A stretch of DNA of 64,000 bases from Asterias rubens (taxonomy: Eukaryota). The notes below the pieces were generated by a model. That model searched no databases. It saw nothing but the letters and a program-made list of their open reading frames with translations, and was not told the origin of the DNA. The position numbers and the translations under genes were made by a program. Of this stretch, positions 5,603 through 38,100 are shown in pieces (the stretch's first letter is position 1; the number at the start of each line of letters is the position of its first letter). The stretch is taken from the NCBI RefSeq assembly GCF_902459465.1, contig NC_047064.1, positions 11,904,001 to 11,968,000 on the forward strand. Reading direction: 5' to 3'.

Positions 5603-5945
5603 ATGCAATTGTAGTATTCGCTCTACAGGTAAGTAGAGTGAAGTAGACCCCCACCCCACAGTAGTGTGGGTGGGTCTACGAGCGAATACTTACCTGTAGA
5701 GCACCCTCCCTCCTACCCCACTATACGAGTGGTTCTTGAGTACTTAGGCGCGTATCGCTTGACGAAAAAGAGGACGCCGACGTGTTGCGCATGTCACAGG
5801 GCGTTGGGGATAGGACTCTTGAGGGCGCTATTGTGTGTAAAACTCTTAGCTTTTGCCTGCCGGCATAGGGAACAATGCAATTGTAGTATTCGCTCTACAG
5901 GTAAGTATTTGCTCGTAGACCCACCCACACTACTGTGGGGTGGGG
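5603..5945 (+). repeat. DIRS-A ICR (5603-5702) and right ITR with extension (~5761-5945)
   Basis: 5649-5702 is the reverse complement of 5892-5945 apart from one mismatch. ATGCAATTGTAGTATTCGCTCTACAGGTAAGTA occurs at 5603 and again at ~5875. Confidence 0.92.
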
Positions 5946-7121: not shown

Positions 7122-10100
7122 TACAACAGGTACCGTCTGATCGCGCGGGTCACACGTGGCGTTCAGCGCTCCCGAGTTTTTAAACAGTTTTAAACTGTTT
7201 CTGCTGTCATGTCTTCTGTGCCATTTGTTTTCGCCAGTCTGTGAGTGTTTGTGAACGTTGCTGTCTTCAGTTTTTTAATCAGTCTTCGAGGAATTGCGAA
7301 GGAAATCGACTTTAGAATGATTCCAGGTATGAATGAGAATAACATGTTTCACGCTATGCACAACGTGGTGTTAGCACTGAGTAAAATAAATAGCCTCGCT
7401 GGTACCCAGCATTTTGACTCTGTACAATCAACGTATCAAAGCTGTGACTTTATCACCGGCGAAAATATTCACGTTCAGATATCATAAGCCTCAGACCAAG
7501 CAACGTGTGGAACACTTTGAAGTCTTTGAACCTCTGCAAGGGGAAGAAAAAACGGACTAAAAGTGGTAAGCGTGGTGGAGTGAAGCACCAATATGCCTTC
7601 ACACAAAGAATAGAAGTTATTATTTCACCATGTAGAACACAATGGCCTTGGGTTATATCGTCCTGCCTTCTACAACAGACCTCAACAATCTCATTTCTGT
7701 TAAAACTGAAACTAGACGTCAACGGCAAGCCGATCCCTTACACTTCCATCATTTACCCTTTTAAACGCCAGATCACTTGTTAAGAGGACTGATGAATTGT
7801 CAACGATCCTGAATATTAATAAAATAGACATTGCAGCAGTCTCCGAAACCTGGTTTCCAGCTAACATTGACACTAGCCATTTTGACATCCCTGGCTTTAA
7901 CTTGTATAGCAGACCAAGGAAACACAAGAGAGGAGGGGGTGTTGCCCTCTATGTACGGGAGAGCATACAAACGATAAATCTGCAGATCATTAACGTACCG
8001 GATGAACTTGAAGTACAATGGATTTGGGCGCGACCCCCACGTCTACCAAGAACAGTTTCTGGGCTTTTAGTTGCCGTACTCTATCACCCACCATCATCAC
8101 CATACGAAGACTTACTTATTGAACACCTTGTTACAACACTGGACACGCTTCAAATAAAATACCCATCGTCTGGTATAGCCATCCTTGGGGACTTTAACAA
8201 TCTCGACACTGATACCATCAGTCGGTTAACTGGCTTGGTCCAGGTTGTTAATGCTCCTACAAGAGGACAAGCCATTCTCCACAAGATCCTAACTAATTTA
8301 AAGAGTCACTACAATGTTCCCCAGATAAATTCACCCATCGGTTTGAGTGACCATAGCACAGTCCTGTGGCTTCATTTTAACTACTCTCACAAGTCTAATG
8401 CCATCCAACGCCGGACTGTTCGACCTCTCAGAGATTCGGATAAACGTCAGTTTGGACAGTGGATCACAAGTTTCGACTGGAATGATGTTATTGCAGCCCC
8501 AACAACGAGTACTAAAGTAGAAGAATTTTACCAATCTCTGCAGAAAGCCTTGGATAAGTACTTTCCTACTCGTACTATCACTGTTCATAACAGTGATAAG
8601 CAGTGGATGACTCCTGAGTTAAAAACTCTTATTGTTAAACGACAAAGGGCTTTTAACTGTGGTAAATTGAATCTTTGGAAATTACTTCGTAATAAGATCA
8701 TTAGACTTATCAAGTTAGCCAGGTCTGCATTTTTCAGCTCTAGTGTTTCAAAGCTTAGCATTAGTAACCCTAGGCAGTGGCACAAACAAATTAAGAAAAT
8801 GACAGGTGTTAAGGTGTTACTCTACCTGGTAGAGATTGCTAACAAAATAAACAAACAATTTACCTCCATTGCTGTTGATATTCCTACTCTAGATCTCGAT
8901 AATTTACCTGCTTACTTACCGTCTGCATCATCAGTCCCCGCTGTAACACTTCAAATGGTTTTTAACAAGCTGAAAAAGGTCAAGTTAGGTAAATCTGGAG
9001 GGCCAGACTGCCTTCCACCACGCATAATTAAAGAGTTTGCCTATGAGTTATTCTTTCCTTTGGCCAATATTTTTAATTGTTCTCTTTGTGAAGGTGTAGT
9101 TCCTGAAATTTGGAAAAAGGCTTTTGTTGTACCGGTCCCTAAGACTAATCATCCAACCATTGATACTCTGCGCCCCATCTTACTCACTTGTATTTTCTCT
9201 AAGGTGTTCGAAGAGTTTGTTGTGGAATGGATCCTTAGTGACATACAGTCTTTCATTGACAAATTTCAATTTGGTTCTTTGAAAGGATCCTCTACATTTA
9301 CATCCCACTGTTTGGTCAAACTCCTGGACGATATACATTGTGTTCTTGATAAACCAAATAATTCTGCTGTGTTGATAGCCACTGATTTTAGTAAGGCATT
9401 TGATAGAGTTGACCACAACTTAGTTATTAATAAATTTATTAAGCTTGGGGTCAGAACTTCCTTAATTCCTTGGCTATGTGGATTTTTATCAGATCGTCTT
9501 CAGGCTGTTAGATATAAGGGTGATATTTCTGATTGGGAGAGATTGCATCTGGAGTTCCCCAAGGAACAAAAATTGGGCCCATTGCCTTTTTAGTAATGAT
9601 CAATGATTTTGTTCCTGATCTTCCAGCGGTCAAACATTACAAATATGTCGATGACCTGACTTTAAGTCAGACCCTCTCTAATCCTAACGAGAGCTCCAAT
9701 ATGCAAAATGTGCTTAATGACCTAAATCACTGGACTGATCTGAATAAAATGAAACTTAATCCCGCCAAATGCCAGTACATGAATATCAGTTTTCAACGTA
9801 ACCAACCTGATCCACCCACTTTTGACATTTTAGATTCTCACATTAATCAAACTGATTGTTTGAAATTGTTGGGTATTTATATACAGAGTAATTTGAAGTG
9901 GGATTCCCAAGTGAACAACATGTATGGTAATTTTAACAGTTGACTGTTCTCTTAAGGCAAGCTTAAACGTTGTTTTATTTCTGTCAAGGATCTGTTAACT
10001 GTATATGTTATGTATGTCCAACCCACTATCGAATACGCCTGTCCTGTCTGGTACTCTGGACTTACTAAAACACAACTCATAACCCTTGAAAGGTTACAAA

Positions 10101-17162: not shown

Positions 17163-20100
17163 GAATGGGCAAGGTCTTCAGGTCCCTGAGTCTTCTTTTC
17201 CACACTCTGCCAACAGTGGTGATGGTGGTGATGAATATACAAGCTCTGAAGCTTCTGAGCTTGACACACTGGGAACGGTTAGTCTAAAACTTAAATTAAT
17301 CTTTTATCATCTTACATTTTTATATTGAAACAATATTGGCAAAAAGGTAGATTCAACTCTTGAAAACAACTTGTACTTTTTATTAATAATTTCTTGGAGG
17401 TAATATTTCTATGGAGTGTGCTGTAGTTTTTTTCTTCTTAAAAACATATTTTTTCTTAGAAAAGATGATATGTTTAATTTTTATTTATTTTTGTCTGTTA
17501 TCAGATTCCAACATGGATTAAAAAAGAGTTAAGAGATTCTGCAGCTGTTACAGAGGAGAATGATGCAGATGACAGTGATGATGGGGGGAATACAGAAGAA
17601 CATGTTGAAAATGACTTCACTTTAGCCAGTATCAAAATCAACAAAGATCTGAAGTTGTTTAATGGTATGAAAATTTGTTAATTAAGGAATAACAGTACAG
17701 GATTGGTGGCTGGCGCTGTTAACAGACCAAAACTCTTAGCTATTTGCCTGCCAGCTTAGGGAACAATGCAATTGTAGTATTCACTCTACAGATAAGTATT
17801 CGCTCGTAGACCCACCCACACTTCTTTGGGGTGGGGGTTTGTTTCAGGCTCAAACATGACATCTGGGTTTTAAAGAACCAAACTCAAACTTAAATCTTAT
17901 ATCTTTTTTTTTTAAACAAAAATCGATCCCTGTCACTGGTTCCAGTTGAATGAGCTGAAACAAATTAAAATCTTAAATGGCTATAGCTCCTCATTGCAAT
18001 GATGTTCTGACTTGAAACTGAAATCAAATATTGCTTCTTAAATATAGATTCAAATAAAAAGATAAAACTCAAAGAGTGCATCACTGGTTCCAGTAAAATG
18101 AGCTAAACAATGAGAACCTTAAATGGTCTTAACTTCTTATTGCAATGTCAATCTATGGTTAGACCTAGACAAAATTGCAACAGAAATGATTTTATTAGCA
18201 ACTGTCTCCTGAAACCCTCTAAAAAAACATATCCAAAAAGAAGAAAAAAATGCATAATATGCATAGTTTGCATACATTAAAAATTAACATTTCCCCCTGC
18301 CTTTGCACACCCTATACAAAATGGGAGTTTTTTTTCACATAATTTGTTTTCATGGGAATGGTCACTGCATTGTTTCTTAACATTATGAGTACAAAGAAAT
18401 TCAAGATGGCTTTAAATAGGGTAATAATCTGAGTTAATCAAACCACTATGCCGATGTACATGCTTTAGACTCTGTGGTAGGTTTAAATGTGATTGTTCAA
18501 TGTTTATAAGTGACATTGTTTTTAAGTCCCATGACAGTCTTTCAGTATTTATCACTAAAGTATTCCCATTTTAAAAACTATATTTGTGACAATGGTATAT
18601 TCAAATAAACAACTATCAACTTTATTACACTTATACATAGGAGACATTCAAAAGCAACTCTAACTTGCATGCAGTGTTTAACTGGAAAAGTTGCATGACC
18701 CCCAAATATTGGTTTGCAACGGATTTTGATGTAACACTACATGGTTTTAATAGTTTTGAGAACTAAAAGGGGGCAAAGAACATTAGAGCTCCTTGCTAAG
18801 CTGTCAGTGGCTACATGTACCTGAGGCGAATTCCTACAGTTTATTCCCTTGCATTCGCCACACACACTACTGAGCATTCCAAGCCCAGCTTCTTGCAGGT
18901 ACATCTCCGGGTATCACAGTATGTTTTGCATTTGCATCGGATCACCTTCACTATTAGATTGTATAGTTATCTTACATTTATGTTAACTGGCGATAAGACG
19001 GTTTTGGCGGGAAAATGGCGGCCATCTTGAAAAATTGCCATCATCTTGGATCTGTGGTTGCTCATAAGTGGTTGGAAAACATTTGGACCATTGCCATGAA
19101 AAAAATCATGTGAACAAAATAAAATTTCTCCTTTGTATAGGGTGTGCATAAGTATTTTAGGGGGAACACGGTAATTTTTGAATTTATGCAAATTATGCAT
19201 ATTTCCCCTGCTTACTTTTTTTCTACTTTTTTGATATGTTGTTTTAGAGAGTTTCAGGAGACACTTGCAAAAATCATTTTGTGTTGCTATTTTGTCTAGG
19301 TCAAGCCATGATTGACTAGACTATGACTTAAAAGTAAGGATACTCATACGAAAAGATAAAATTAAAAGAGTTTGCAACGGATTTTGATGTAACACTACAT
19401 GGTTTTAATAGTTTTGAGAGCTGCTGCTTCAATTCTAGCTCACCAAACAACTAGTATTAAATGAGGGATTCTGCCTGGTCCTGCAGTTCAACCAGATTTA
19501 CCAGGTGAACTGTTGACGGGAGCACTTCATAGCCCCCTAGGTTCACACTCAGCCATACCACAGGTGCACCTAGTACCGAACTCTGGTACGGATTACACCC
19601 CCTCATCCAGCTGCTGATTCAATTCTAGCTCACCAAACAACTAGTATGAAATGAGGGCTTCTGCCTGGTCCTGCAGTTCAACCAGATTTACAAGGTGAGC
19701 CGTTGGCGGGAGCACTTCATAGCCCCGTAGGTTCACACTCAGCCATACCACAGGTGCACCTAGTACCTAACTCTGGTACGAATTACACCCCCTCATCCAG
19801 CTGCTGCTTCAATCCTAGCTCACCAAACAACTACATGTAGTATGAAATGGGGGCTTTTGCCTGGTGCTGCAGTTCAACCAGATTTACCAGGTGAACTGTT
19901 GGCAGGAGCACTTCATAGCCCCCTAGGTTCACACTAGGGAAACATGCAGCAGGCAAGGAGTTCCAAAGAGATGCATTACCAGGGAAAAAGCTACTGGAGT
20001 AGCTCTTTGTTCTACATCTCGGCACAGCCACAGTATAGGGATGAGAACAAGCAGAAAGCCTGGTCTCACGCTCAAACACCCTGGAAGGAGGAACAAGGTT

Positions 20101-23100
20101 GGATAGACTGGGGGAACATTTACTATGGAAATATCTGTTAAGCAGACAGAGGCTGGCTACAGACCTTCGGTGAGAAAGGGGTTATAGTGTAGATCTTAAC
20201 TCTTCTCAAACCAGGTTAACAATGCGCTTCTGCACTTGATCTATTAAAGATAAAAGGCAGGCAGAAACTCCAGCCCAAATATGGCAACAGTACTCCAGGA
20301 GGGGATGTATAGTTGTCTTGTACAGGTAGAGAGTAGCCTCAGGAGGTAAGAACTTCCGAGCTCGGTACAGACAACCTACTCGCATGGAAGCACTCTTGGC
20401 GATACCTGAGATATACACCTCCCAACCCGAATTACTGGAGATGTCCAAGCAAACGAAAGTGTGATACCTCGGGCAAAGTCGACGAACCCACATGAATGGA
20501 GGGAAATGTATCATCTCTAGAGTGAGAAAGGGGCAGTAGTTTAGTTTTCTTAGAATTGAAGGTTACGTCTTACGCGTCTTATCCGCAGGAAAATACGATA
20601 CCAGCGAGTTGTTTCCCCACTTCAGTGCATTGTCTAAATCATTGTTGAGTGAGGCACCCACCCCACCACGGGAAGTGCTAGAAGAGTTGGAGGAAACAGT
20701 AGAGAGTTGAATCATCAGCATACATGGCTAGCTGAGACAAGATTACATCAGGTAAATTGTTTATGTACAGAAGCAAGAGAGAAGGACCAAGGACTGAGCT
20801 CTAGGGAACACCTGAACTGATAGAATGAGTAAGAGAAGATTGACCCTCAAGCTTCAACTTGTGGTTGTAAAGGAAGGCAGAAATTATAGCTAACATTCTA
20901 CCCAACATGCACTTTCGCAAACCTTGGCCTGGGCTCCAGCTGCGTACACATTAGAAACGCAGCTATGCTTTTAACCTGAATTTTTAGAGCAGCGCGAATT
21001 GCACGCCAAAGTTGGAACATCAGCAGAACTTTTAGTTAGAAGTCGTGACAGTATTGTTAAGTTTCCGGAATGGTGCGTTTTCCTTTTAAGTTAACATTGT
21101 TAAGTTACCCTCACTCAAATCGGCCTGTTAACTTGACAGCCCGGTGGTGGTAAGTTACCACCCAGGTAAGTTACCGGCTGTTCACACTGGGACTTAATAT
21201 CGAAAGTTACCAAGTTGCAGCAGTTAACCATTGAAGTTGAATGCGAACACTGCTATATACCTGTTATATACCTAATTATCAACACCTAACTAAAAGCAAA
21301 GTCATCATTGCGATGATATAATTAACTGCCACATATACATTTTTACAATCTATTTACATCATTTGCTTAAAAAGTTACATTACAGAATTGGTAAGCAACA
21401 AAAATTGTCTATTGGGTCACAGATTTACATTAAACTTACACAATCGGTCTAATGATGACGAAAGTAGAAATAATCCCTTGAAAATATTTCTGTTTGAAAT
21501 GTCATATTTGATGAGAAATAAATAAAACTAATTTCCAGTTTATTGTTCAGTGAGCGTTTTATTCAATTTTTTGTTATCGATGTCATGCAAAATGTGTAAT
21601 TGGTTTTTCACACTATTTTCTCGTGACATGTAGATGGCCGATCGATCTCAAACTTTTTCTGGTTTGTCTGCAGTTTATGTGTATGGTGGATTATATAAAT
21701 TACTGACACTGCCAGCAACTTTTTTGTTAGCAAGAACCTATTTTGTAATGTTCCTTTAACATCTATGAAACTATAATTGATGTCTTCTGTTTTAGGAAAT
21801 AATCAAATCGAGAGGGAGAGTAAAGGACAAGTGGTTGTTAAAAGTAAACTTGGACAATCATCAGATCATCAGGTAAATTTTATTTTTAATTTCTAAATTT
21901 ACCAGTATGGGAGGTCCTTCGTATAATTGGGACAAGGCTGTGGTATACCTCAAGTGGCAGTTGGATAATACATGTACAATGTAATATAGCCTCACTGTTA
22001 TCACATCAATTTCATTCTAAATTTCACTACAATATTTAACAGGTACCTAAAGTAACTGGACACTATTGATAATTGTCAAATACCAGTCTTCACACTTAGT
22101 GTATCTCAACATATGCATCAAATAACAAACCTGTGAAAATTTGAGCTCAATTGGTCATCGAAGTTGCGAGATAATAATGAATGAAAAAACACACTTGTCA
22201 CACGAAGGTGTGTGCTTTCAGATGCTTGATTTCGAGACCACAAAAGTTAATTCTGAGGTCACGAAATCAAGTTCGTGGAAAATTACTTCTTTCTCGAAAA
22301 CTCCCTCACTTCAGAGGGAGCCGGTTCTCACAATGTTTTATACTATCAACCTCTCCCCATTACATGTTACCAAGTGAGGTTTTATGCTAATAATTAGTTT
22401 GATTAATTACCAATAGTGTCCACTGATTTTAAGCAAATTTGTTTTTGACAGAATGCTATTTGATTTTGTTACAACGTGTTTTTTACCATTTAACTTTAAT
22501 TTTGATATTTGTACACTTCTGAACTTTTCACAATTATCAAAAGAAAAAAATCTTAAAAAATCAGGCCCCAACCGAAAGGTTTTGAAAAACTAAAAACACT
22601 TCTGCCATTGACAGCGTGCGTCAAAATGACAATGACATCATGTTTGAGAGTTTGCTTTGTTATACCTCGACGCTGCAACAAAGTGGCTATACAAATTGGA
22701 GCTCCCAACTATGACGTAATGAGTTATGACTAAACAGAGCTTTTTGCGAATCTTTAAAAAAAAAGCTGGATCAGGGTATTTGAATTGTTTGTTTACACAA
22801 TTAAAATCTATTGATAGTCATATGACTCGATTTCCTTATTGATTGAAAACATTTCAGCAAAGATCACGATTTGCCATTTTCGTCTTTAAGGAAAGACCAA
22901 CCAAATGATCCAAAGCTCCTTACCATTGTTATTTCAAGCTTTTGTAACCATTAAACACGTTAAACTTCTGTCATTTATCTGGCGTGGCATGTTGTGTCCC
23001 AAAGGTATCATAGGCCAAATTTCATAGATTATGAAAGCACAAAAAGTTCTTAGCAAAACTTTTACTTAGCAAAAATAATTAAACAGCCAGAACACCGTAC

Positions 23101-26100
23101 AGTTGCCATCGCTGCGATTGGTGCCCCTGTAATTTCTTGCTTAGCCATGAAATTTGCTGCTTGAATTTTCTGCATTTAAGTTCAGTTGTCTAGTGGTAGA
23201 CATCTGCTTTGGCAATGCAAAGGTCCTAGGTACAAACCCCACCTGATTGGTTTGCATGTGAACAGTGCTTAAAGTGGGTTTATAGCGGTAAAGTAAAATG
23301 AAAGAAGAATAAGTATGTTATAAAACAAATCCTACTGATTCTAAATAAAATATGACAAACAAAACGACAAACCCAGCACTGTTTTGAACGCCTCCTGACC
23401 CATTATGAAAACAAACAAATTAAGATAATAGTGCGTGTGACCCCAACACGTCACTGACATGACACGGCGAAAATCACGTGACGCGGAAGTAATCTGTACA
23501 TAATACGTACTACATTGTAGTACAATGCACTGTCACAGTGTTCGGAGTTCACTCGACACACGCTGCAGTCATTGTAGTACACAATGCACTGTCACAGTGT
23601 TCGGAGTTCACTCGACACACGCTGCTGTCATTGTAGTACACAATGCACTGTCACAGTGTTCGGAGTTCACTTGACACATGCTGCAGTCATTGTAGTACAC
23701 AATGCACTGTCACAGTGTTCGGAGTTCACTCGACACACGCTGCAGTCATTGTAGTACACAATGCACTGTCACAGTGTTCGGAGTTCACTCGACACACGCT
23801 GCAGTCATTGTAGTACACAATGCACTGTCACAGTGTTCGGAGTTCACTTGACACACGCTGCAGTCATTGTAGTACACAATGCACTGTCACAGTGTTCGGA
23901 GTTCACTTGACACACGCTGCAGTCATTGTAGTACACAATGCACTGTCACAGTGTTCGGAGTTCACTCGACACACGCTGCAGTCATTGTAGTACACAATGC
24001 ACTGTCACAGTGTTCGGAGTTCACTCGACACACGCTGCAGTCATTGTAGTACAATGCACTGTCACAGTGTTCGGAGTTCACTTGACACACGCTGCAGTCA
24101 TTGTAGTACACAATGCACTGTCACAGTGTTCGGAGTTCACTCGACACACGCTGCAGTCATTGTAGTACACAATGCACTGTCACAGTGTTCGGAGTTCACT
24201 CGACACACGCTGCAGTCATTGTAGTACACAATGCACTGTCACAGTGTTCGGAGTTCACTCGACACACGCTGCAGTCATTGTAGTACACAATGCACTGTCA
24301 CAGTGTTCGGAGTTCACTCGACACACGCTGCTGTCATTGTAGTACACAATGCACTGTCACAGTGTTCGGAGTTCACTTGACACATGCTGCAGTCATTGTA
24401 GTACACAATGCACTGTCACAGTGTTCGGAGTTCACTCGACACACGCTGCAGTCATTGTAGTACACAATGCACTGTCACAGTGTTCGGAGTTCACTCGACA
24501 CACGCTGCAGTCATTGTAGTACACAATGCACTGTCACAGTGTTCGGAGTTCACTTGACACACGCTGCAGTCATTGTAGTACACAATGCACTGTCACAGTG
24601 TTCGGAGTTCACTTGACACACGCTGCAGTCATTGTAGTACACAATGCACTGTCACAGTGTTCGGAGTTCACTCGACACACGCTGCAGTCATTGTAGTACA
24701 CAATGCACTGTCACAGTGTTCGGAGTTCACTCGACACACGCTGCAGTCATTGTAGTACAATGCACTGTCACAGTGTTCGGAGTTCACTTGACACACGCTG
24801 CAGTCATTGTAGTACACAATGCACTGTCACAGTGTTCGGAGTTCACTTGACACACGCTGCAGTCATTGTAGTACACAATGCACTGTCACAGTGTTCGGAG
24901 TTCACTCGACACACGCTGCAGTCATTGTAGTACACAATGCACTGTCACAGTGTTCGGAGTTCACTCGACACACGCTGCAGTCATTGTAGTACACAATGCA
25001 CTGTCACAGTGTTCGGAGTTCACTCGACACACGCTGCAGTCATTGTAGTACACAATGCACTGTCACAGTGTTCGGAGTTCACTTGACACACGCTAGTACA
25101 CAATGCACTGTCACAGTGTTCGGAGTTCACTTGACACACGCTGCAGTCATTGTAGTACACAATGCACTGTCACAGTGTTCGGAGTTCACTTGACACACGC
25201 TGCAGTCATTGTAGTACACAATGCACTGTCACAGTGTTCGGAGTTCACTCGACACACGCTGCAGTCATTGTAGTACAATGCACTGTCACAGTGTTCGGAG
25301 TTCACTTGACACACGCTGCAGTCATTGTAGTACACAATGCACTGTCACAGTGTTCGGAGTTCACTCGACACACGCTGCAGTCATTGTAGTACACAATGCA
25401 CTGTCACAGTGTTCGGAGTTCACTCGACACACGCTGCAGTCATTGTAATACACAATGCACTGTCACAGTGTTCGGAGTTCACTCGACACACGCTGCAGTC
25501 ATTGTAGTACACAATGCACTGTCACAGTGTTCGGAGTTCACTTGACACACGCTGCAGTCATTGTAGTACACAATGCACTGTCACAGTGTTCGGAGTTCAC
25601 TTGACACACGCTGCAGTCATTGTAGTACACAATGCACTGTCACAGTGTTCGGAGTTCACTCGACACACGCTGCAGTCATTGTAGTATACAATGCACTTTA
25701 CAGTGTTCGGAGTTCACTCGACACACGCTGCAGTCATTGTAGTACAATGCACTGTCACAGTGTTCGGAGTTCACTCGACACACGCTGCAGTCATTGTAGT
25801 ACAATGCACTGTCACAGTGTTCGGAGTTCACTCGACACACGCTGCAGTCATTGTAGTACAATGCACTGTCACAGTGTTCGGAGTTCACTCGACACACGCT
25901 GCAGTCATTGTAGTACAATGCACTGTCACAGTGTTCGGAGTTCACTCGACACACGCTGCAGTCATTGTAGTACAATGCACTTTACAGTGTTCGGAGTTCA
26001 CTCGACACACGCTGCAGTCATTGTAGTACACAATGCACTGTCACAGTGTTCGGAGTTCACTTGACACACGCTGCAGTCATTGTAGTCCACTTCAGGGGAC

Positions 26101-29100
26101 TCCCTTACCTGTTAAACCTACAATTTGCATATTTCTCTTAGCCTTAGGCTTCCACGCTAGAATTTTATACCACAATAGGGCGCCCTCCATCGTCCGCCCC
26201 TGCCCACGGCCAACTCGTCCTCTTTTCTCTAGCGTTCAGCGAAGACAGACGTGTTTTTGTTACGGACGGATCCTTAAGTGATTTTTGGTATTTTCGGAGG
26301 AAGTTGTGAGTTTTTCCTTTAGTGATTATACTGTGCTTCTTACGTTTTATATTGTAAAGACGTTTACTTACTGTACAGAGTACACTCGTTTTCTGTTTTT
26401 GGTAATTAAAATTACACGAGTTGTGTCAGTGCTTTATTTTTGAATTGTTAAAAGATTTCACGTTACATTTTCAGTTATTAGGATGGCGGACTCACGCAAA
26501 AGCAAGCGTGGGGTGACGCCCAAAAATTTTGTTCCATGTTCTTCTTGCCGACGTATTAAGCCCCGTCCCGAGCAAGATTTACATGCCTTGTGCCCCCGTT
26601 GTAGACCGTGTAACCGGCAAGTGTCGTGCTCGGTTTGCAAGGACTGGGGGTCAGCAGATTGGGAGGCCGTAGCGGCATGGGTTCGTTCCCGGTCTCCCTC
26701 GGGTGAATCGGCAGCCAGTGCATCTTCCGGAGCTGTGTCCAGAGCCAAAAAGACGACATCGGCAGGACGATCGCCGCTTTCCGGGGTCATGCCTAAAGGG
26801 TCTCTGGCCACCGGTAAAGCATCGGGCCATACTACTAAATCCGTGCCTGTGAGGCCTCCGGAATTTAGTATAGTCACTGGCGCCGAGAGTCCAAGCAAGA
26901 TCACTCAATCGGGGGAAATGTCCCAGGCCGTTTTGAGTGATGGATCCGACACGGCGCCCCCAGCCGGGCAGCCCGTGATCGCTTCCAAACGTAAGCAGGG
27001 GAAGAAAAAGGGTACTTCCCGGGCCAAAGCTGTGCCTGCGGTGCAGGTAGCGACAGGCCACGTTAGCCCCGGTGAAACCGGAACAGACTCCGGTAAGACG
27101 GGAACGGTACCCGGAAACACCAGTGCCCGGCCAAAGACATTGGCGGGTGTTTATGTGGCCCCGGCCCCGAGCCACGGACAGCATCGGAGCCGGGATAAGT
27201 CCGATGGTGAGGAACGCCACCGGCGTAAAAGACGCCGAAGATATACTAGTTCCAGTTCATCATCCTCATCTTCCCGATCGCCACGGGGTCATCGCCGGCA
27301 TCATAGTAAGCGGGAAGACCCCACATCGGCCCTTCTATTACAAGGGTTCCGTGAACTGACGGCCAGTATCACGTCACTAATACCCAAGCCGACAGCGCCG
27401 GCTCAACCGGTGGCTCCACCGGAGCCAAGGCAGGTTTTACCGAGGATGGAGGACGTAATGTCAATCACCGTCTCGGATAGTTTTTCCGACCCGGGCAGTG
27501 TGTCAGATAGGGATCCACGCCGTGTTTCAGCAGCGGTAGCGGTCCCAGACACCGAACAATCCTCGGGAAATGAGGAAACTGTTCCCCTGACACAGCGACG
27601 GGATAACCGGGAACGACCCCCAGGGCGGGAGGATGATTCATCGGGTGATGAATCATCCTACCAATCCACAACCGACCAGCGATTGCGTATGGTCATGAAA
27701 GATATGGTACGGGTGTTGCACATACCTTCCAATGAAGAACCAGACCCGGTAGACGGCGCTAGACAATCGTTTAAGCGTCGTACCGCGCCGGTCGAACCAA
27801 AGGAATTTTTTCCGGTTCTTCCAATTGATCGGCTGTGTGCCGATCGTATGAACGCACTTTCGGAAGTGAAAAAGATACGTCCGTTCGTGCGCCGGGAAAC
27901 TCGCCCGTTCAGAGTACCTCAGGCAGACTTTGATAATTTTTTATCAGTGCCGCCCATGCCCGCTACAGTGCGTGATAAAATCACGGCGGATTCGGGCGGT
28001 CGAAGTACTTTGAAGTCACCTTTTCCGTCCAAGGAAAAAAATGTGTTTGAGGAGTCATTAATAAAAATTGATACGGCTTCACGGGCAGGAATTCGGGTGG
28101 CATGTTTTTTACAACTCCTTTCCGAATATTTGGTGTGTTCTTGTGAAGCAGATTCACCTGTATCACCAGAGGAAACCGAGACAGCTTTTCGTTGCCTTGA
28201 CGACGGGCTACGGCTGTGTATGGACCAGTTTATGCGGGTGTCCTTGATGACAATCAATGCACGGAGGACAAACGTTTTGGATACGATTTTTGTTCCCTCC
28301 GATGGATTGAGGTCCAACCTGGAATCTCTCCCCCGGCTGAGTTCCGATTTATTTGGAGGAAAATTCCAGGAGGTCATGCAAGCCGAGGCGAAGCGAATTA
28401 AAGCCACAGACAAGATTAACCTCAATAAACAATCAAGTCAAGGAGGCAGCTCTCGTCCGGCAAGAGGCAACAGTGGAGCTACTAAGGGCAAAACGTTCCC
28501 CCGTAAACCTTTGAAGCCGTTTGCTCCAAATCCATCGGGCTCTGCTTTCAAGCCCACTACAACTGTTGTACAGAGTCAGGCTTTTGGGTCGCGTTCACGA
28601 GGTAGAGCCGGCTTCACCCCCCGCTCCAAAGCTTCGCGCGGAGGTTACCGGGGTGGTGCTTGGCGCCGGTGACGCCCCCCTTCCCACGACCCCCTTTCCA
28701 GGGCCCGTGGGGGGTCGACTCATTTATTTCGCAAAGACTTGGGCCCTTTTGTGCAACGACGGGTGGGTACAAAAAACGGTAGCTTCCGGCTACAAAATAG
28801 AGTTTACAAGTACTCCCCCGTCTGCATACCTACCGAGAACAACACCGATTCCAACCGACCGAACCAAGCGTCATGCTCTGGAGTCGGAGATATCCGCCCT
28901 CTTGCAAAAACAAGCCATATGCAGAGTGCAAACAGAGGATGCGAATCGAGGGTTTTTCTCAACCTTTTTTCTAGCTCCAAAGAAAAACACAGGAGAATGG
29001 CGACCGATTTTAAACCTTCGGCCATTAAACAAATATGTCCGACCAAAACGGTTTCGGATGGAGTCGCTGCGGACAGTTTTGGATGCATTACCCATTCCAA

Positions 29101-32100
29101 CCTGGGCAGTGTTGATCGATCTAAAGGATGCCTATCTACATGTTCCGATGTGGGCCGAACATCGAGCGTTCCTACGGTTTTGTTACGACCAAAGGACTTA
29201 CGAATTTCTGACACTACCGTTCGGCCTTTCCACTGCCCCGAGGGTGTTTACACGGCTGGTGAAAGTCGTAGCAGGAATCCTCCGGCGACGTCAGGTACAG
29301 ATTTTTGTTTACCTGGACGATTGGCTCATTGTTGGGGAGACAAAGGAGGAAACAAGCTGGGCACTCAAACTAACTGCAAACATCATTTCGGAGTTAGGTT
29401 TTCTGATCAACATCGAAAAATCGCAGCCAAATCCGACAAGGCACCCAGTTTTCTTAGGAGCAAAACTGGACCTCCAGCGAGGACTAGCTTTTCCTACCGA
29501 GGATCGAGTCCACAATCTTTTGGACTGCATCACTCTGTTCAGAACTGCCAGTGTGGCCCCAGCAGTGGCATGGCTTCGGCTATTGGGCCTAATGGCAAGC
29601 ATGGTGGACGTACTCCCATGGTGCAGATTGCGGATGCGCCCGATACAGTTGCATCTACTTGCATACTACCGACCATGTATTCACCATATCCAGCGGCCAG
29701 TGCCAATCCCAAATATGATTTGCCCCCACCTGGACTGGTGGTCGCGGCGAACAAACATCATGGTGGGACTGATTTTCCCACGACCGCGACCTACCTTAAC
29801 TCTGGTGACCGATGCCTCCAACACAGGTTGGGGGGCACACATTGGAATGGAATCAGTAGCGGGCTCTTGGTCCCAGGCGGACAGTCAATACCACATCAAT
29901 GTCCTAGAACTGCTCGCAGTTTTTCGGGCACTGAAACATTTTGTCAGAATAGTGACAGGGGAAGTGGTCCTCATAAAATCGGACAACTCAACGGTTGTCT
30001 CTTACATAAACCGCCAGGGCGGAACGCATTCCCCGCAGTTGTGCATGCACACATGGGAGCTTCTGCTTTGGTGCCAGGCGAGACAGATCAATCTTACGGC
30101 GGTCCACTTAGCCGGAAAGCTGAATATCATGGCGGATGCTCTGTCTCGGGGGAAGGTCCTTCCAACCGAATGGACTCTGCACCCGGCAGTGGTTCAATCG
30201 ATCTTCCAAGTATGGGATCGTCCTCACATCGATCTGTTTGCGTCGGCACTGAACCATCAGTTACCGGTGTATTGTACACGCAACCAGGATCCGAAGGGAT
30301 GGGCAGCAGACGCTTTTTCCATCAGTTGGAAAAACATGCTAGCATACGCGTTTCCCCCGATCTCGCTTCTACCAAGGGTACTGACAAAGATCGAGGCGGA
30401 AGAGTGCAGAATCATCCTCATCGCACCATTTTGGCCACGCCAGCCTTGGTTTCAGAAAATAGTTCGCCTCTTGTGCAAGCCGCCGATAATTCTACCGGTG
30501 CGATCAGACCTACTGCGTCAACCACGGTCCCTGATCCCGCAACCAGGGGTAGAGTCCCTCCACCTAACATCTTGGATGCTGTCAAGCAATCACTGCGATC
30601 AGCGGGCCTTTCAGCAGACGCTGCCTCATTGGCAGCCCAAGGCCGCAGACTGTCTACCCGTAGGACTTACGACAGCCGATTACGACATTATCATAGGTGG
30701 TGCGAAGAACACACTTATGATCCATGCACAACGCCTCTAGCAGTGGTTGGAGATTTCTTTATGTACCTGTTTCATAAGGATTTGACGATATCCACTATTC
30801 GGGGCTATAGATCAGCTATAGCGGCTGTCCATAAAGGGTTCGCAGATGGATCTACTGTGTCCAATAACGCTAGCCTGGCTCAGCTCCTGCGGGGGATGTA
30901 TGTTGAAAGGCCTCCATCTAGGAAGCTGGTTCCATCCTGGGATCTTGCACAAGTTCTTAAGGTCCTGGCGGAACCGCCATATGAACCATTGGCGAATGCC
31001 CCCTTATTGGACCTATCAGTCAAAACAGTTTTCCTGTTGGCTACAGCCACAGCTAGACGAAGAAGTGAGCTCCATGCCCTTTCAGTTGAACCAGGGCACA
31101 TTAGATGGGAGCCAAGTGGAGTAAGACTGGTGCCTCGTCAGGGGTTTTTAACGAAGAATCAATCTCCTTCCTTCCTTCCTCCACCAATTTTCGTGCCGGA
31201 CCTTAAAAGTTTTTCCTCGGTCCCACAAGATAAACTGTGGTGCCCAGTTCGAGCACTCAAGTGGTACCTGGCTCAAACAAAACCCTTGAGAGGAGACACC
31301 ACCCAACTGTTTATTTCAACAAATAAACCACACAAAGCAGTCTCTGCAGACTCCATTTCCCGGTGGATAGTTACAGCTATCCAGGCATCTATCAAAGACT
31401 GGCCAAAGGTACCGGACATTCGGGTCAATGCCCATGACACCAGAGCCATGACGACATCATGGGCCTACTTTAAAGGTGTCCCCATTCAGGACATTTTGCA
31501 AGCAGCAGCCTGGAAAATACCATCAACATTCACATCCTGCTACCTGCGGGATGTTCTCCAAGCAGAAGGAAGGACGGGCCGTACAGCCCTCTCAATAGGA
31601 GCATCCAAGGAAGGTTCTACCCTGGAGTGATGGGGGCATTACCTCTGGATCAAGAAAGAATAAGCTTTCTGGTGAGTTCTTTAGTTTTTTATTCATACCT
31701 TTTGGTATGGGACAACGCGAAGGGACATTAAGTTTTAGGTTTCCCGAGACGCGGTTTTTTGAATAGGCTCGCTCTGAAGCCCACCATCCATTTTTCGGGG
31801 CTAGTCTATGCAAATTGTAGGTTTAACAGGTAAGGGAGTCCCCTGAAGTGGACTCCCCCAAATCTAGGTGATTTGGGAGTCCGCGAAGGGACGATACTTA
31901 CCTGTTAAACCCTCCCTCCCTCCTTCCCCACAGTGGCTCGCCTTACTAAGTTCTAGAGAAAAAGAGGACGAGTTGGCCGTGGGCAGGGGCGGACGATGGA
32001 GGGCGCCCTATTGTGGTATAAAATTCTAGCGTGGAAGCCTAAGGCTAAGAGAAATATGCAAATTGTAGGTTTAACAGGTAAGTATCGTCCCTTCGCGGAC

Positions 32101-35100
32101 TCCCAAATCACCTAGATTTGGGGGAGTACAATGCACTGTCACAGTGTTCGGAGTTCACTCGACACACGCTGCAGTCATTGTAGTACACAATGCACTGTCA
32201 CAGTGTTCGGAGTTCACTCGACACACGCTGCAGTCATTGTAGTACAATGCACTGTCACAGTGTTCGGAGTTCACTCGACACACACACGCTGCAGTCGTTT
32301 TATGCAATATTCCTTCTACTTTTAATGCTGGATTGAGTTGTTATTGTACAATTTGGCCATCAAAGTTAAGTGTAAATGGTACAAAATGTCAGTATCGTGT
32401 GTCATCTTGGGTGGATGCTCATAAGGCGAAAAATGTGGACGTATTTTGGTTGACTTTTTTCAAAGAACGGGCCACAGCGAGCATGGGTTTGACTCATAAA
32501 CAACACACGCTCCGACTTCTGATTTACAAGTTCATCATAGGCCTATAATTTGCTAGGCACACTTTTGTGATGATTGCGTGGTCAAAATCGTGGATTATAT
32601 GAAACGAATTTGTCTTGGTTCCAGAGGAAGAGACCCAGAGAGAGAGAAAGTGAGCAAGGGTATGTACACTTAATGCTTATTTCGTTTTTAATATCGTGGG
32701 AAGTATTTTTTCATTTCATTTAAGTTTTTATTTATTTGTATTTTATTTTATTTTATTTTATTTTATTTATTCATTTATTTCTTCTTCATTTTTTGAGAGG
32801 GGGGGGGATGGGGGTGGTCGATCATATGTAGAAAGAACCATGTATGATAAATTTTAGTGAGATGCAGTAGTTGTTTATCGGATTGGATGTCATTTAAGCT
32901 GTGAACTTCCATTTTGTAAGTGTACAAAACAAATATCTTTATGTTGTGTTACCTAATTAAGTAAGACAGATAACCACAAAGTTTCCAATAACCCAAACAG
33001 CCATATATTAAAATGTGTTGTTGTTGTTGGCCCTCTGAAAATTTGGTTCTTAATCGTTAGTTGTCCATTGATTTGTTCTCATTTTAAACGTTAAACAGGT
33101 ATTCAACAAGTGGAAGATGAATACAGTGAGCAACTCAGAGATTTGTATGAACCAGAAATACTGGTTGGATGTGAGTAATAATCAACAATCTCAAATCATT
33201 AGTCTGTTGCTTTAATAAAAGCGCACTGCATTTTCCATTCCCATTGCTATCAATTCTGAAAGTATTTGGTGGAGATTTTTCTCCCAGCCTAACTGTCACA
33301 TCCCGGAATTTGAGATAAGCCAAAACGGGACACAACCTTTGGTAGATAGTTTCACACACACACACAAGAGAGGGTAAAATCAAACGCATTGTCCACAAAT
33401 TCATTTACGAATGAAAGAAGGAGGCTCCACCCATTTAGTTTGCTTGGGGTGCGGTGCCTGGGGTGTCGGAATCAGGCCCGCTGAACACCAAGTCATTCCC
33501 GTCTCGCTGTAGTCTATATCAACTCTTTCATTTCTTCCTTCCCATCTCTCTACATCCCTCTCTCCCTCTCTCTTCTCCCATGTGCGGTTCTCCCTTCATG
33601 GGTAATTTGGGGGTTTCCTCTCCAAAATTGGGACCCTGGAAAGAACACATAATAACACCTTATTCCTCTGCAATATTATATACAAAAACTAATACCAATG
33701 GGCGACATCTTAATGTTTGAACACTTATCATTTTGACAATATTACAAAAATAAAAGCTCCACTTAGTTGTTTTAAAGGAAATTCTTCTTTAAACACAAAC
33801 TCCAAACTACTTGATCTCAATTTCTAAATCAAACAAATACTTTCTCAAATTAAATTATTAAACACAACAAAATATGATTACTTACAGCTGTAAATAATCA
33901 TATTTTGTCGTTCTTTCGATCCTGGCCTAGAGTAGTACGCCAACGAAACTGCTTTTAATGATCAGTTGACATAATATTACTTATGCCGTACTTGACGCTC
34001 TAGGAGCACTCATTTGCTCATTCAATATATACCTCTATAGAACTTAATCTGGAAACTGCTCAGTTCTCAATAACTGGCTCTAAAATATCGAGGCTGACAA
34101 ACACACCGTCCTCTCCTCAGATATCTCAAGTCGCAAGTGCCCACTCAAATAATATTTGCTCCCAACAAATTTATGAAACCCGCGAAAAGGTGTACCCTGT
34201 GACTCCAATGTATTGTTACCAAAGGGGTGCATAATGAAACAGAAGCACTACTGGCCCCATATTAATACAGCCAATCACAGAGGATTCTATTAACTTTACG
34301 TAACTCCCATTCTTTAAAATGAAGTCTACGAACTTTACAGGCCCATTGGCCATAAAAACCAAAATGATGTTACTCTTAAACGAGTGGTTAAGAGCATCGA
34401 ATTCAAGTTCTGGTGCAGTCACCGGAGTGTGGGTTCAAATCCCGGTCGTGACACTTGTGTCCTTGAGCAAGATACTTTACTATAATTGCTTCTCTTCACG
34501 GAATAAATGGGTACCTGCGAGGGTAGAAGTTGATATTGTGAATGAAAAAGCCTTTGGAGCGATATAAACTGTTGCCCAGTTGTATACTCCCAAGGGAGCT
34601 GAGAAACATTAAAAGGGATGTTATAGGCCCTATGACCAGGGCACTAATGTAAAGCGCATTGATACGTGTAATATTCGGGAATAACTGGAGAGTATTCAAG
34701 ACAAGATGTCTGCCTTTATGAGCATGTTAACATGTGCTAATAATATGAACACTTGAGGGCGCAATAACAATAGTGCGGAGTCATTATTCTACATCTCCCC
34801 CCAAGTACAGATTGGTGTACTTTAATCCCAAAAATTTTTCAACAAATCCAAGAGTGTCCATGAAAAGATCTCTAGAGTCCATGAATCATGTACGAATGTT
34901 AACGCTTAAACAACTTTAATAATTTTAAAAACCAAAACAGTAACTAGAATTTTTAGCAAACAAGACAACTGGAATAACAACTTCAAAAAATTCTGCATGA
35001 TTTTTATGCAGAGAGAGCAACAACTTCCCAACTCTCAATTTTTTAGCCTGCAATGTTTTTAATGCAGCTATTTGCTTTTTTGGGAACGTTTTTTGTTTTG

Positions 35101-38100
35101 TTTATAAATCAAGGCGGTTAGGCGGCTTCACTAAATGTCCTGATTGGGTCGTCATCACCGCTGGTGGTGGAGTACTCGATGGTGGGGACAACTCCACTCT
35201 GGAGAAGTGGATGGAGGAAACTGCTGCATTGGAGTAGGAAGTACTGTCTGCGTTGTTACATCAGAGGCTGGAGACAGTAGTGCATCTGGGTCGGGTGTTT
35301 GAGGGGTGTGGTCTGGTGTGGGGACGAGAGCTGATCGATTTCGGCGAACTGTGCCAAGATGGCTGGGATGATTTAGCGAGGATGGTCTCTTGGCGGTTCT
35401 GGTCTCGGATCCAAACTGAGTCACCAGGGTGTAGTGTTGGTAGAGTCGTAGCACGGTGACGAAGATTGAAGTTGTGCTGTTGCTTTGTGCGTTACGCTTC
35501 TTCTTTCTGTCTGATCGTCTGGTCCTGTTGAGCTTTCGGATGTAGATTTGATGGAAGGATAGGCAGGGTTGTCTTTAGTTTCCTGCCCATCAATAGTTCG
35601 CTTGGGGACAGGCCATTTTGAAGTAGGGATGAGCGATACATCAGAAGGGCGAGGTACGGGTCTGTGTTCTTCTTAAGCAGCCCTTTGATCGTGCGAACTG
35701 CTCTCTCGGCTTCCCCATTTGCCTGTGGGTTCCGTGGGGAACTAGTTGTGTGGATGAATCCATACGTCTTTGCAAACTGGAGGAATGAGGCTGAGCTAAA
35801 TTGTGGCCCATTGTCGGACATAATCACATCTGGGATTCCGTGTACTGCAAAGATTTCCTTCAAGGCTTGGATCACAGCAGCTGAGGTTTGGACAGATGAG
35901 AGAGACTTTATTTCTATCCAGCGTGAATAGTAGTCAATGACGATGAGGTAGATTTTCCCCCGATACTCAAACAAATCCGCTCCCAGTCTTTCCCAGGGGC
36001 GTGACGGGAATGATGCTGGCATAAGAGGTTCACGCTGTTCTGGTCGATGCTTTGCACAGGTCACACATTTGGAGATCATGTCTTCAATACTCTTGGAGAG
36101 ACCAGGCCACCAAACAGATGTGCGTGCTCGGGCTCGGCATTTAGTGATACCAAGATGGCCTTGATGGATACGATCAAGTATATCCAATCTCATGGATCGT
36201 GGGATAACAATGCGATCATCATACAGAAGAAGATCATCGAGGATAGAGAGATGACTTCGGTTTTCCCAGTACTGGCGCAGTAGTGTGGAGTGTGTGGCAT
36301 GTATACGGGCCAACCGCCAATGCAGAACTCCTTTATCTGTGTGCATTCCTCGTCTGATTTCTGTGCTGCAGCTATTTCGAGTAGACGTTGCGAAGTTGCT
36401 GGTAGTGAAGTCAAAACGTGATTACAGAAATTCTCTATTTTGGATATCAGAGCTGTGTCGGTTTCATCTGGTGTACCAACAGGAGCACGGGATAGTGCAT
36501 CAGCAGTAGTCTGGAGCTTGCCGGGAACATACTCAACAGTCGGACTAAATCTCATCAATCGAAGACGGAACCAAAGAATACATGGGGGCATCTTGGAAAG
36601 TTCCTTTGTCTGAAGGAGAGACACAAGTGGTTTGTGGTCTGTCTCAAGAGTGAAGTGGAGACCGAGGACATAGTCAGAGAACTTTTCACAACCCCAGGTT
36701 GCAGCTAATGCTTCCTTCTCGATGACTGCATGTCGCTTCTCCGTGTCAGATAGAGAACGCGATGCGTAGCAGATTGGGTGACGTTTCCAATTGTCTTGAG
36801 TCTGAAGCAGAACGGCGCCAATTCCAGATGAAGAAGTATCCGTGGCTACAAAGGTTGGACGGGATGGTTCATAGTGAGCCAGGACTGCAGATGAGAGAAG
36901 TAGATCTTTCACTCGTTGAAAAGAACTCTGCTGGGCTTCCCCCCAATACCAGATTGTGTCTTTCCTGAGCAACTGGCGTAATGGCTTGTTAATCTCTGCC
37001 AAACCAGGGACAAATTTGCCGAGTTGGTTGACCATTCCCATGAATCTCTGAAGCTCAGTGATGTTGGATGGGACAGGATATTCTGCGATGGCTGTAGTTT
37101 TGCCTTTATCTGCGTGAATCCCTTCTGTGTCTATCACGTGGCCCAAGAACTTGATGGAGTGTTTGGAGCAGTTGAAGCAATATCGGCCTGAAGGACTCCA
37201 GTAGTCGCTGTTACTTGTGACTTCACCAAGGAATGGTAAATCATCGTCGAAAGAATCCTGGACTTCATGTACCTTTGTGGTGTTGCGTTTGGATGTATTT
37301 CCACTTAAGCATACTGGCTTGAAATGTCCTGGTTTTGAGCAGGTGTCACATACAGCATCTTTCGCTGGGCAGTCACGACGGGGATGGCTTGTTCTTCCAC
37401 ACCATCTACAACTGCGTGACTTTGAATCATGTTCGTGGGTGTACTGTTTGGTGCGAGGCTGTCCCTTAGGTTTCGCAACATGATCAACGCTAGAAGAAGT
37501 GGCCATGTCACCACATACTATGTCACGACTATCCTTTCTAGCTGCAGACTGGCGGCATATCTGGACTGCTTTGGTCAGATTGAGATCAGCTTTGGTTTGA
37601 AGAGAGTCAGACAGTTTATCATCTAGTACTCCCACAACGATTCTATCTCTGATGAGGCTTTCTTCAAGATCACCATATTGACAATTGTCAGCCAGTCTAA
37701 ACAGATCTTGGATAAATATGTCGATTAATTCATTTGGCAGCTGTTTACTTCGATTAAATCGAGCCCTCTCGACGATCACGTTGCGTCTGCTTTCATAATG
37801 CTTATCGAGAGCTGCCTAAACTTCAACATATGTGGCCGTTTCCTCTTTAATACTGAGTGCCACAATGATATCGTCGGCACATTCCCCCATAGAATACAAC
37901 AGAGTGCTCACCTGTTCCCGGTCGCCTTTGATGTTGAGGCTGGAGGCGATTCAATAGCGCTCGAATCTGTTGACCCATTTTTGCTAAAGTTCACTCTGGT
38001 GTGGTCCGTTTCCACCTTCAAACTTGCCTGGCAAGGGTAAATGGGTTCGTGGGGCGTTTTCCATGTCAGATGTGGGTCTTGATAACCGCTGCCACCATGT

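What the first reader, a model, noticed from the sequence alone, without database searches (positions are those of the whole stretch)
26078..32133. Integration footprint: AGT crossover core at the centre of a palindromic satellite junction
Seen: left junction CATTGT-AGT|CCAC and right junction GGGGG-AGT|ACAATG. The ICR encodes the circle junction GGGGG-AGT-CCAC (ACT at 31852-31854). Removing the element restores CATTGT-AGT-ACAATG, a perfect 6-bp inverted repeat around the 3-nt core. This palindrome is found only in the minority 57-bp junction; the 59-bp junction is CATTGT-AGT-ACACAATG. Established: DIRS elements are thought to integrate a circular intermediate by tyrosine recombination through a short shared core. 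Inference: the YR may prefer symmetric att-like targets, making this satellite a landing pad. This rests on a single insertion.
Basis: partly seen in the sequence, partly recalled or inferred. Interest (0 to 1): 0.75.

Follow-up and report, generated by a model that had tools for sequence, protein, structure and literature searches.

The report
DIRS retrotransposon inserted in minisatellite palindrome
A young DIRS-type jumping gene sits at the centre of a small palindrome in a local tandem repeat, but a dozen sister copies show that the AGT on both sides is the family's usual short target motif and that palindromes and satellites are not preferred.

Summary
A 6.04-kb DIRS1-like element (inverted terminal repeats, internal complementary region or ICR, gag-like ORF, RT/RNase H, tyrosine recombinase) interrupts a 57/59-bp minisatellite. 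AGT lies at both junctions and once, as ACT, in the ICR. Removing the element restores CATTGT-AGT-ACAATG.

The AGT logic is already published for DIRS1-like elements as the 3-bp circular junction (PMC3266345, PMC7192593).

- Twelve other family copies (97-99.9% identical) have flanks with chance-level symmetry, on average 1.4 of 6 arm pairs.
- No tandem repeat abuts any of their junctions.
- The satellite exists only at this one locus in the 417.6-Mb genome.

AGT identity is not needed either. Left junctions read N-GT and right junctions read A-NN, and only 4 of 13 pairs are AGT/AGT. Paralogous empty sites for six copies fit a crossover between A and GT.

The target logo is short: A | purine-T-C, resembling the circle junction GGA|GTC. 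A second family in the window shows the same pattern.

This is an ordinary new member of a known kind. One residual oddity remains: the satellite site used scores poorly on that logo.

The parts
23513..26084 (+). Left part of the 57/59-bp minisatellite, ending with the target base A (26084) of the interrupted CATTGT-AGT-ACAATG junction
   Evidence: TRF; junction census; array found only at this locus
26084..26086 (+). Left junction trinucleotide AGT. By comparison with other copies, A is target-derived and GT is element-derived
26085..32125 (+). DIRS1-like element 'family B', 6,041 bp, with bounds GT...A inferred from 13 left and 15 right junctions
26104..26226 (+). Left inverted terminal repeat, conserved part; 26087-26103 is the divergent tip that matches only the ICR
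   Evidence: the repeat finder (pairs I1 and I3)
26483..28672 (+). ORF1, gag-like, 729 aa, open, no Pfam hit
28521..30740 (+). RT / RNase H ORF with a C-terminal part that looks like the DIRS methyltransferase-like domain (by eye only)
   Evidence: Pfam RVT_1 1.4e-20 and RT_RNaseH 1.3e-06; translation; no Pfam hit for the C-terminal part
30560..31630 (+). Tyrosine recombinase, the C-terminal part of the 28739-31630 frame, with R...HxxR...Y motifs present
   Evidence: Translation; weak Phage_integrase hit E=0.008; 60% identity to the family-A recombinase, which has SAM-like domain hits
31807..31911 (+). Internal complementary region: reverse complement of the left end (31807-31851), ACT (31852-31854), reverse complement of the right end (31855-31911). 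It encodes the circle junction
   Evidence: the repeat finder (pairs I2 and I3)
31960..32124 (+). Right inverted terminal repeat (31960-32082) plus the right extension (32083-32124), which contains a CCCAAATC/GATTTGGG hairpin
32125..32127 (+). Right junction trinucleotide AGT. By comparison with other copies, A is element-derived and GT is target-derived
32126..32290 (+). Right remainder of the minisatellite, about 2.8 units, continuing in phase
   Evidence: TRF

Best explanation
This is a recent, ordinary insertion of a DIRS1-like tyrosine-recombinase retrotransposon into a neutral, locus-specific minisatellite. The element's ends are rebuilt on the ICR, so its joined ends read ...GGGGGA|GTCCAC.... 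The recombinase crossed this junction with a chromosomal site a|bc. The result is flank-a|GT...element...A|bc-flank, with nothing duplicated or lost. Here the target happened to read A|GT, so AGT appears on both sides. Target choice depends on a very short resemblance to the circle junction: A before the crossover, then a purine, T and C after it, with weak G enrichment at the two positions further left. It does not depend on longer symmetry. The 6+6 (strictly 7+7) palindrome belongs to the satellite unit and is coincidental for the family's mechanism. Shown: the anatomy, the junction statistics, the empty sites, and the lack of symmetry or satellite preference. Inferred: that the recombinase does the crossover, and the exact strand chemistry.
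For: Anatomy of a DIRS1-like element. The ICR equals the reverse complement of the left end, ACT, then the reverse complement of the right end. Twelve further copies are 97.2-99.9% identical to this one. Left triplets are AGT x9, TGT x2, GGT x1 and AGC x1. Right triplets are ATT x5, AAT x4, AGT x4 and AAA x2. So GT is constant on the left (12 of 13; AGC in the degenerate copy), A is constant on the right (15/15), and every ICR reads AGT. At 1-3% divergence, mutation cannot explain 9 of 13 unequal pairs. Empty sites: neighbouring satellite units and copy 2's paralogue each show a single AGT. Copy 9's paralogue in this window reads ctgg-TTC-cagt. Copy 11's two tandem paralogues read TTT and GTT. 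Copy 13's paralogue reads ATT. Among these, the informative empty sites (copies 9, 11 and 13) lack the left G, and those of copies 9 and 11 also lack the right A. Logo against background: position L-1 is A in 10/13 (p=0.001); R+2 is T in 13/15 (p=1e-5); R+3 is C in 10/15 (p=6e-5); R+1 is G in only 4/15 and never C. Family A (circle GGGG|GTCTAC) repeats the pattern in 21 right flanks: R+1 is not held to the circle's G and is never C, R+2 is T in 14/21, R+4 is T in 16/21, R+5 is A in 17/21. Its left-end hits all extend through the G before GT. There is no symmetry, no tandem repeat at other junctions, and no similarity to the circle outside the core. Published consensus data show the same thing, with start xTT and end xNT in several DIRS1-like elements (PMC3266345, Table 3).
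Against: A weight matrix built from the other copies scores the satellite site used at -4.0. It is the only site with A at R+3. A site 9 bp upstream, gctgcA|GTCatt, scores 7.2 and is present in every unit but was not used. Only 11 of 277 AGT sites in the array are palindrome centres. The right flank of the window site matches the circle at 7 of 12 positions, where the background chance of 7 or more is 1.3%. So something beyond the short logo may have favoured this site. The sample is small (13-17 junctions). Paralogous empty sites are 80-93% similar rather than identical, and copy 5's paralogues differ by one base in length and are not decisive. No read-level empty allele could be examined.
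Confidence: 0.8

Rival explanations
1. One reading: the recombinase prefers symmetric, att-like targets, so the palindromic 57-bp junction of this satellite is a landing pad.
For: The site used is a perfect CATTGTA-G-TACAATG palindrome centred on the G of AGT. The circle junction GGA-G-TCC is itself a 3+3 palindrome on the same centre. The site is a poor match to the family logo although a much better match lies 9 bp away in every unit. Only 11 of 277 AGT sites in the array are palindrome centres. An earlier, unchecked scan note (s1-175560) reports another DIRS in this genome with a palindromic empty site.
Against: Twelve other copies show 0-3 of 6 complementary arm positions, mean 1.4, which is chance. 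The best local inverted repeats near their crossovers have arms of 2-5 nt. No tandem repeat abuts any other junction. The satellite is unique to this locus, so it cannot be a recurrent landing pad. The 57-bp and 59-bp types have the same arms, the same local sequence through R+6 and equal hairpin energy. It is a single event, selected after the fact.
Confidence: 0.07
2. The strict classical model: recombination needs an identical 3-bp core (AGT) in the target, across a 3-nt overlap. Unequal triplets arise later by mutation, or by repair of heteroduplex DNA.
For: Four of 13 copies are AGT|AGT, and two of them have empty sites with a single AGT. The published model is phrased this way (PMC3266345, PMC7192593).
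Against: Nine of 13 pairs are unequal although the copies are 97-99.9% identical. The differences are not scattered: the left side varies only at position 1 and the right side only at positions 2-3. A 3-nt heteroduplex would give (AGT, xyz) and (xyz, AGT) products equally often, yet the second type is seen 0 times and GGT|ATT or TGT|ATT pairs fit neither. Paralogous empty sites read TTT, GTT, TTC and ATT, not AGT.
Confidence: 0.06
3. AGT is a 3-bp target-site duplication made by staggered cutting, as with DDE integrases.
For: AGT appears as a direct repeat at both ends of this copy.
Against: The ICR carries AGT once between the two end complements, so it is part of the element's joined ends. 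Most copies lack identical flanking triplets. The element encodes a tyrosine recombinase and no DDE integrase.
Confidence: 0.01

Closest known systems
DIRS1-like retrotransposons of metazoans as annotated by Piednoel et al. 2011 (PMC3266345, Table 3), for example SkoDIRS1 (6,052 bp), TnDIRS1a, AcDIRS1/2 and XtDIRS2
   Same: Size of about 6 kb. gag, RT/RNase H/(MT) and tyrosine recombinase ORFs with long overlaps. Inverted terminal repeats with a divergent tip and a right extension. An ICR whose two halves meet at a 3-bp circular junction that also flanks the element. No target-site duplication. Several published elements have an end trinucleotide that differs from the start only in its middle base (GTT/GAT, TTT/TAT, CTT/CAT), as the copies do here.
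   Different: The trinucleotide here is AGT (ICR ACT), whereas 23 of the 28 published elements have NTT. The per-copy data here place the crossover between bases 1 and 2 and show that the middle base need only be a purine.
Dictyostelium DIRS-1 (Cappello model; Malicki et al. 2020, PMC7192593)
   Same: Ends are restored on the ICR, and the recombinase is proposed to integrate a circular form carrying the junction trinucleotide. The ICR was shown experimentally to be essential.
   Different: DIRS-1 inserts preferentially into other DIRS-1 copies at centromeres. The family here is dispersed in unique or other-repeat DNA on many contigs. There are no experimental data for this element.
Integron attC x attI and CTX-phage/XerCD integration (single-strand exchange resolved by replication)
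   Same: It resembles these only in outcome. There is a sharp crossover at one phosphodiester next to a very short conserved motif, no heteroduplex products, and tolerance of non-identical flanks. A folded single strand supplies the recombination site.
   Different: No homology is claimed. For DIRS this is a hypothesis, compatible with the single-stranded cDNA found by Malicki et al. but untested.
Tn916 / CTnDOT-type heterology-tolerant tyrosine recombinases
   Same: A tyrosine recombinase inserts a circular form into many loosely related sites without needing identity across the overlap.
   Different: Those leave 5-7 bp coupling sequences, and both heteroduplex outcomes are seen. Here no coupling sequence is seen and only one outcome (13 of 13 copies).

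Membership tests
DIRS1-like retrotransposon (order DIRS) | Reverse transcriptase plus RNase H of the Ty3/gypsy-related type | tested here: met
   Pfam RVT_1 1.4e-20 and RT_RNaseH 1.3e-06 in the 28521-30740 ORF
DIRS1-like retrotransposon (order DIRS) | Tyrosine recombinase instead of a DDE integrase | tested here: met
   R...HxxR...Y motifs in the translation. Weak Phage_integrase hit, E=0.008, below the gathering score. 60% identity to the family-A recombinase, which has Phage_int_SAM_1 hits. No rve or DDE domain in the element. The PDB sequence search was uninformative.
DIRS1-like retrotransposon (order DIRS) | Methyltransferase-like domain after RNase H, which separates DIRS1-like from Ngaro and VIPER | tested here: inconclusive
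   Pfam finds nothing in residues 527-739 of the pol ORF. By eye the stretch has the AFPP-type motif expected from the literature. No profile or structure test was run.
DIRS1-like retrotransposon (order DIRS) | Inverted terminal repeats rather than direct LTRs or split direct repeats | tested here: met
   123-nt arms, 100% complementary
DIRS1-like retrotransposon (order DIRS) | Internal complementary region made of the complements of both termini, placed side by side | tested here: met
   31807-31854 pairs with 26084-26131 at 100%; 31844-31911 pairs with 32068-32135 at 96%
DIRS1-like retrotransposon (order DIRS) | 3-bp circular junction in the ICR matching the trinucleotides that flank the element; no target-site duplication | tested here: met
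   ACT at 31852-31854; AGT at both junctions. A single trinucleotide in the empty sites.
   12 other targets: 0-3 of 6 complementary arm positions, mean 1.4. No information in the logo beyond L-3 to R+3.
Satellite-targeting element (landing pad) | Repeated use of the satellite, or enrichment in tandem repeats | tested here: not met
   The satellite exists only at this locus. None of 12-14 other junctions abuts a tandem repeat.

The most novel reading that the evidence does not exclude
Every copy has the same sharp boundaries (GT...A). There is no trace of an overlap region or of the reciprocal heteroduplex product. Non-matching bases are tolerated right next to the crossover. This is what a single strand exchange at A|G followed by replication would give. 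The recombination site would be the folded single-stranded cDNA in which the ICR pairs with the joined termini, as in integron attC or CTX-phage integration, rather than the double-stranded circle of the classical DIRS model. In that case the short target logo (A|R-T-C) would reflect pairing of the swapped target strand with the ICR.
Probability: 0.15. Interest if true: 0.6.

Novelty: new member of a known kind. Interest (0 to 1): 0.25.

Why it matters
The integration step of DIRS elements has never been reconstituted, and the specificity of their tyrosine recombinase is unknown (PMC7192593). This family offers about a dozen near-identical copies, several of them with preserved paralogous empty sites. 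Together they locate the crossover to one phosphodiester (A|GT) and define a target motif of about 4 nt that mirrors the circle junction. That detail is modest but usable for designing recombination substrates. It also shows that the attractive palindrome idea should not be carried forward from this single insertion. The insertion itself is ordinary.

Tried and rejected
Family A therefore contributes 21 right flanks, one left junction and alignment extents only.
3. Copy 5 (GGT|ATT) has many paralogues in a repeat family. They differ by one base in length near the site, so they are compatible with the a|bc model but not decisive.
4. Extended similarity of targets to the circle junction outside the core was tested and rejected for the family (Mann-Whitney p=0.43).
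5. A symmetric 1-nt overlap at the middle base would fit the GA-N-TC look of the logo. It predicts equal numbers of a-b-T / A-G-T products, and 0 of 9 informative copies are of that kind.
6. A PDB sequence search with the recombinase gave nothing useful.
7. No literature proposing single-strand exchange for DIRS was found in the held library. Goodwin & Poulter 2001 and Goodwin et al. 2004, which first described the trinucleotides, could not be read here and are cited only through PMC3266345, PMC7192593 and PMC9210276.
Full report
**Observation.** The left junction is cattgt-AGT-CCAC, with AGT at 26084-26086. The right junction is GGGGG-AGT-acaatg, with AGT at 32125-32127. The repeat finder gives a 123-nt, 100% inverted terminal repeat (26104-26226 with 31960-32082). 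It also shows that 31807-31854 is the exact reverse complement of 26084-26131, and that 31844-31911 pairs with 32068-32135. The ICR is therefore the complement of the left end, then ACT (31852-31854), then the complement of the right end.

The satellite census finds 33 junctions of the 59-bp type (CATTGT-AGTAC-ACAATG), 10 free junctions of the 57-bp type (CATTGT-AGT-ACAATG), the occupied one, and two variants. Removing the element restores a sequence that the neighbouring units carry verbatim.

**What the element is.**
- ORF1 (26483-28672) is a 729-aa gag-like protein with no Pfam hit.
- The 28521-30740 ORF has RVT_1 (1.4e-20) and RNase H hits.
- The C-terminal third of the 28739-31630 frame is a tyrosine recombinase. 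It has the R...HxxR...Y motifs and a weak Phage_integrase hit. It is 60% identical to the recombinase of a second DIRS family in the window, which hits the SAM-like integrase domains.

With inverted terminal repeats and an ICR, this is a DIRS1-like element. Its methyltransferase-like domain was not confirmed by any profile.

**What is already known.** Piednoel et al. 2011 (PMC3266345) describe the 3-bp circular junction where the two ICR halves overlap. They describe integration by recombination with an identical genomic trinucleotide, without target duplication, and they tabulate 28 elements. Most of those are NTT. Several have an end trinucleotide that differs from the start in the middle base.

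Malicki et al. 2020 (PMC7192593) restate the model, show that the ICR is essential, and find single-stranded cDNA intermediates. The specificity of the recombinase remains untested. So the 'AGT crossover core' is the family-specific form of a published feature.

**Testing the new inference with sister copies.** The genome (G000, 417.6 Mb) holds about a dozen further full-length copies on other contigs. They are 97.2-99.9% identical to the window copy over 1.4-1.7 kb. I extracted 13 left and 15 right junctions.
- None of the other insertions is in this satellite.
- TRF finds no tandem repeat abutting any other junction.
- The satellite itself matches nowhere else in the genome. It is a single 2.7-kb minisatellite.
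- For the 12 other paired copies, the number of complementary positions in the 6-bp arms around the 3-nt core is 0, 1, 1, 2, 3, 2, 3, 3, 0, 0, 0, 2. The mean is 1.4 and chance is about 1.6.
- The best local inverted repeats near the crossover have arms of 2-5 nt.

**The 57-bp versus 59-bp distinction.** It carries no weight. The two types are identical from well left of the crossover to 6 nt right of it. They have the same 6-bp arms and fold equally well. Eleven of 46 junctions are of the 57-bp type, so p is about 0.24.

**AGT identity is not required.** Left triplets are AGT x9, TGT x2, GGT x1 and AGC x1 (the last in a degenerate mini-copy). Right triplets are ATT x5, AAT x4, AGT x4 and AAA x2. 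All ICRs read AGT. Variation is confined to position 1 on the left and positions 2-3 on the right.

The simplest account is that the element is GT...A and was inserted between bases a and b of a target a|bc. Preserved paralogous empty sites support this:
- The satellite units and copy 2's paralogue in L088 show a single AGT.
- Copy 9 (TGT|ATT) has a paralogue in this window (about 18031-18140) reading ctgg-TTC-cagt.
- Copy 11 (TGT|ATT) lies in a long-period tandem repeat whose two other units read gttg-TTT-t and gctg-GTT-t.
- Copy 13 (AGC|ATT) has a paralogue reading ATT.

In copies 9 and 11 the left G and the right A are absent from the empty sites, and in copy 13 the left G is absent (its target base is itself A, so the right A cannot be judged). 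Copy 5's paralogues are compatible but not decisive.

**Target logo.** Measured against local background, the base before the crossover is A in 10/13 (p=0.001). The second base after it is T in 13/15 (p=1e-5). The third is C in 10/15 (p=6e-5). The first base after the crossover matches the circle's G in only 4/15 and is never C. There is weak G enrichment two and three bases to the left. This mirrors the circle junction GGA|GTC.

Family A (circle GGGG|GTCTAC) gives the same picture in 21 right flanks. The first base after the crossover is not held to the circle's G and is never C. Then T is found in 14/21, T in 16/21 and A in 17/21 at positions 2, 4 and 5. All listed left-end hits include the G before GT. 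Pooled over both families, the first base after the crossover is a purine in 29 of 36 sites. Outside these few positions the targets are no more similar to the circle than random DNA.

**Mechanistic reading.** The formal outcome is a reciprocal crossover at the A|G phosphodiester. A staggered exchange with a mismatched overlap of two or more bases should leave two product types in equal numbers. Only one type is seen: 9 of 9 informative copies on the right side and 3 of 3 on the left. So either the effective overlap is at most one base, or only one strand exchange is fixed and replication does the rest. I rate the second reading, which would fit the single-stranded cDNA of Malicki et al., at about 15%.

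**Residual oddity.** A weight matrix from the other copies scores the window's site at -4.0. It is the only site with A three bases after the crossover. The site gctgcA|GTCatt, 9 bp upstream in every unit, scores 7.2. Within the reconstructed array only 11 of 277 AGT sites are palindrome centres. The right flank also matches the circle at 7 of 12 positions. These points keep a small probability, about 7%, for some structural contribution of the palindrome. But this is one event, picked out because it looked symmetric.

An earlier, unchecked scan note (s1-175560) mentions another DIRS with a palindromic empty site in this genome. I could not reach it.

**Limits.** An earlier follow-up note names the genome as the starfish Asterias rubens, which I did not verify.

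**Verdict.** The AGT/ICR logic is already known. The symmetric-target and landing-pad inference is not supported. The useful addition is the per-copy placement of the crossover and the short target motif.

Noticed in passing
window 1-5945 (family-A DIRS; ICR 5596-5702, right end at about 5945): The window's family-A copy has no left terminus within 3 kb upstream (L061). It also carries F where 20 other family-A copies have Y in the C-terminal recombinase motif DL[Y/F]LKD, the position aligned with family B's presumed catalytic tyrosine.
   Followed up: partly
window 32118-32125 joined to 26085-26110; ICR 31830-31860: The family-B circle junction GGA-G-TCC is a 3+3 palindrome centred on the G of AGT. 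In addition, GGGAGTCC...GGACTCCC can form an 8-bp stem across the junction. The right extension also has a CCCAAATC/GATTTGGG hairpin (-7.6 kcal/mol, z=-3.2).
   Followed up: partly
window 26483-31630: The gag-like ORF and the recombinase frame are in the same reading frame, separated by the gag stop codon at 28670-28672. The RT ORF overlaps both in another frame. This is the subject of another scan note.
   Followed up: no
L011/L015 (G000:C19, about 0.626-0.633 Mb): One family-B copy sits inside a long-period tandem repeat. The 300 bp on its two sides are about 90% identical to each other with a 30-nt offset, which supplies built-in empty-site controls.
   Followed up: yes
window 22041-22425, 50578-50956, 61700-61920 and several loci: A dispersed short repeat family (about 76-90% identical copies, with a conserved ...ttcagagggagc... 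core) hosts the insertion of family-B copy 5. It was not identified further.
   Followed up: no
window 7797-9593 and 35492-37779 (minus strand): Other retroelements lie in the window: a non-LTR element ORF (endonuclease plus RT) and a Ty3/gypsy-type RNase H/integrase.
   Followed up: no
G000:C20:11421080-11421130: A family-A left end is preceded by TGGGG, which matches the element's own right end. This could be a head-to-tail junction or a solo circle junction. The sequence could not be fetched.
   Followed up: no
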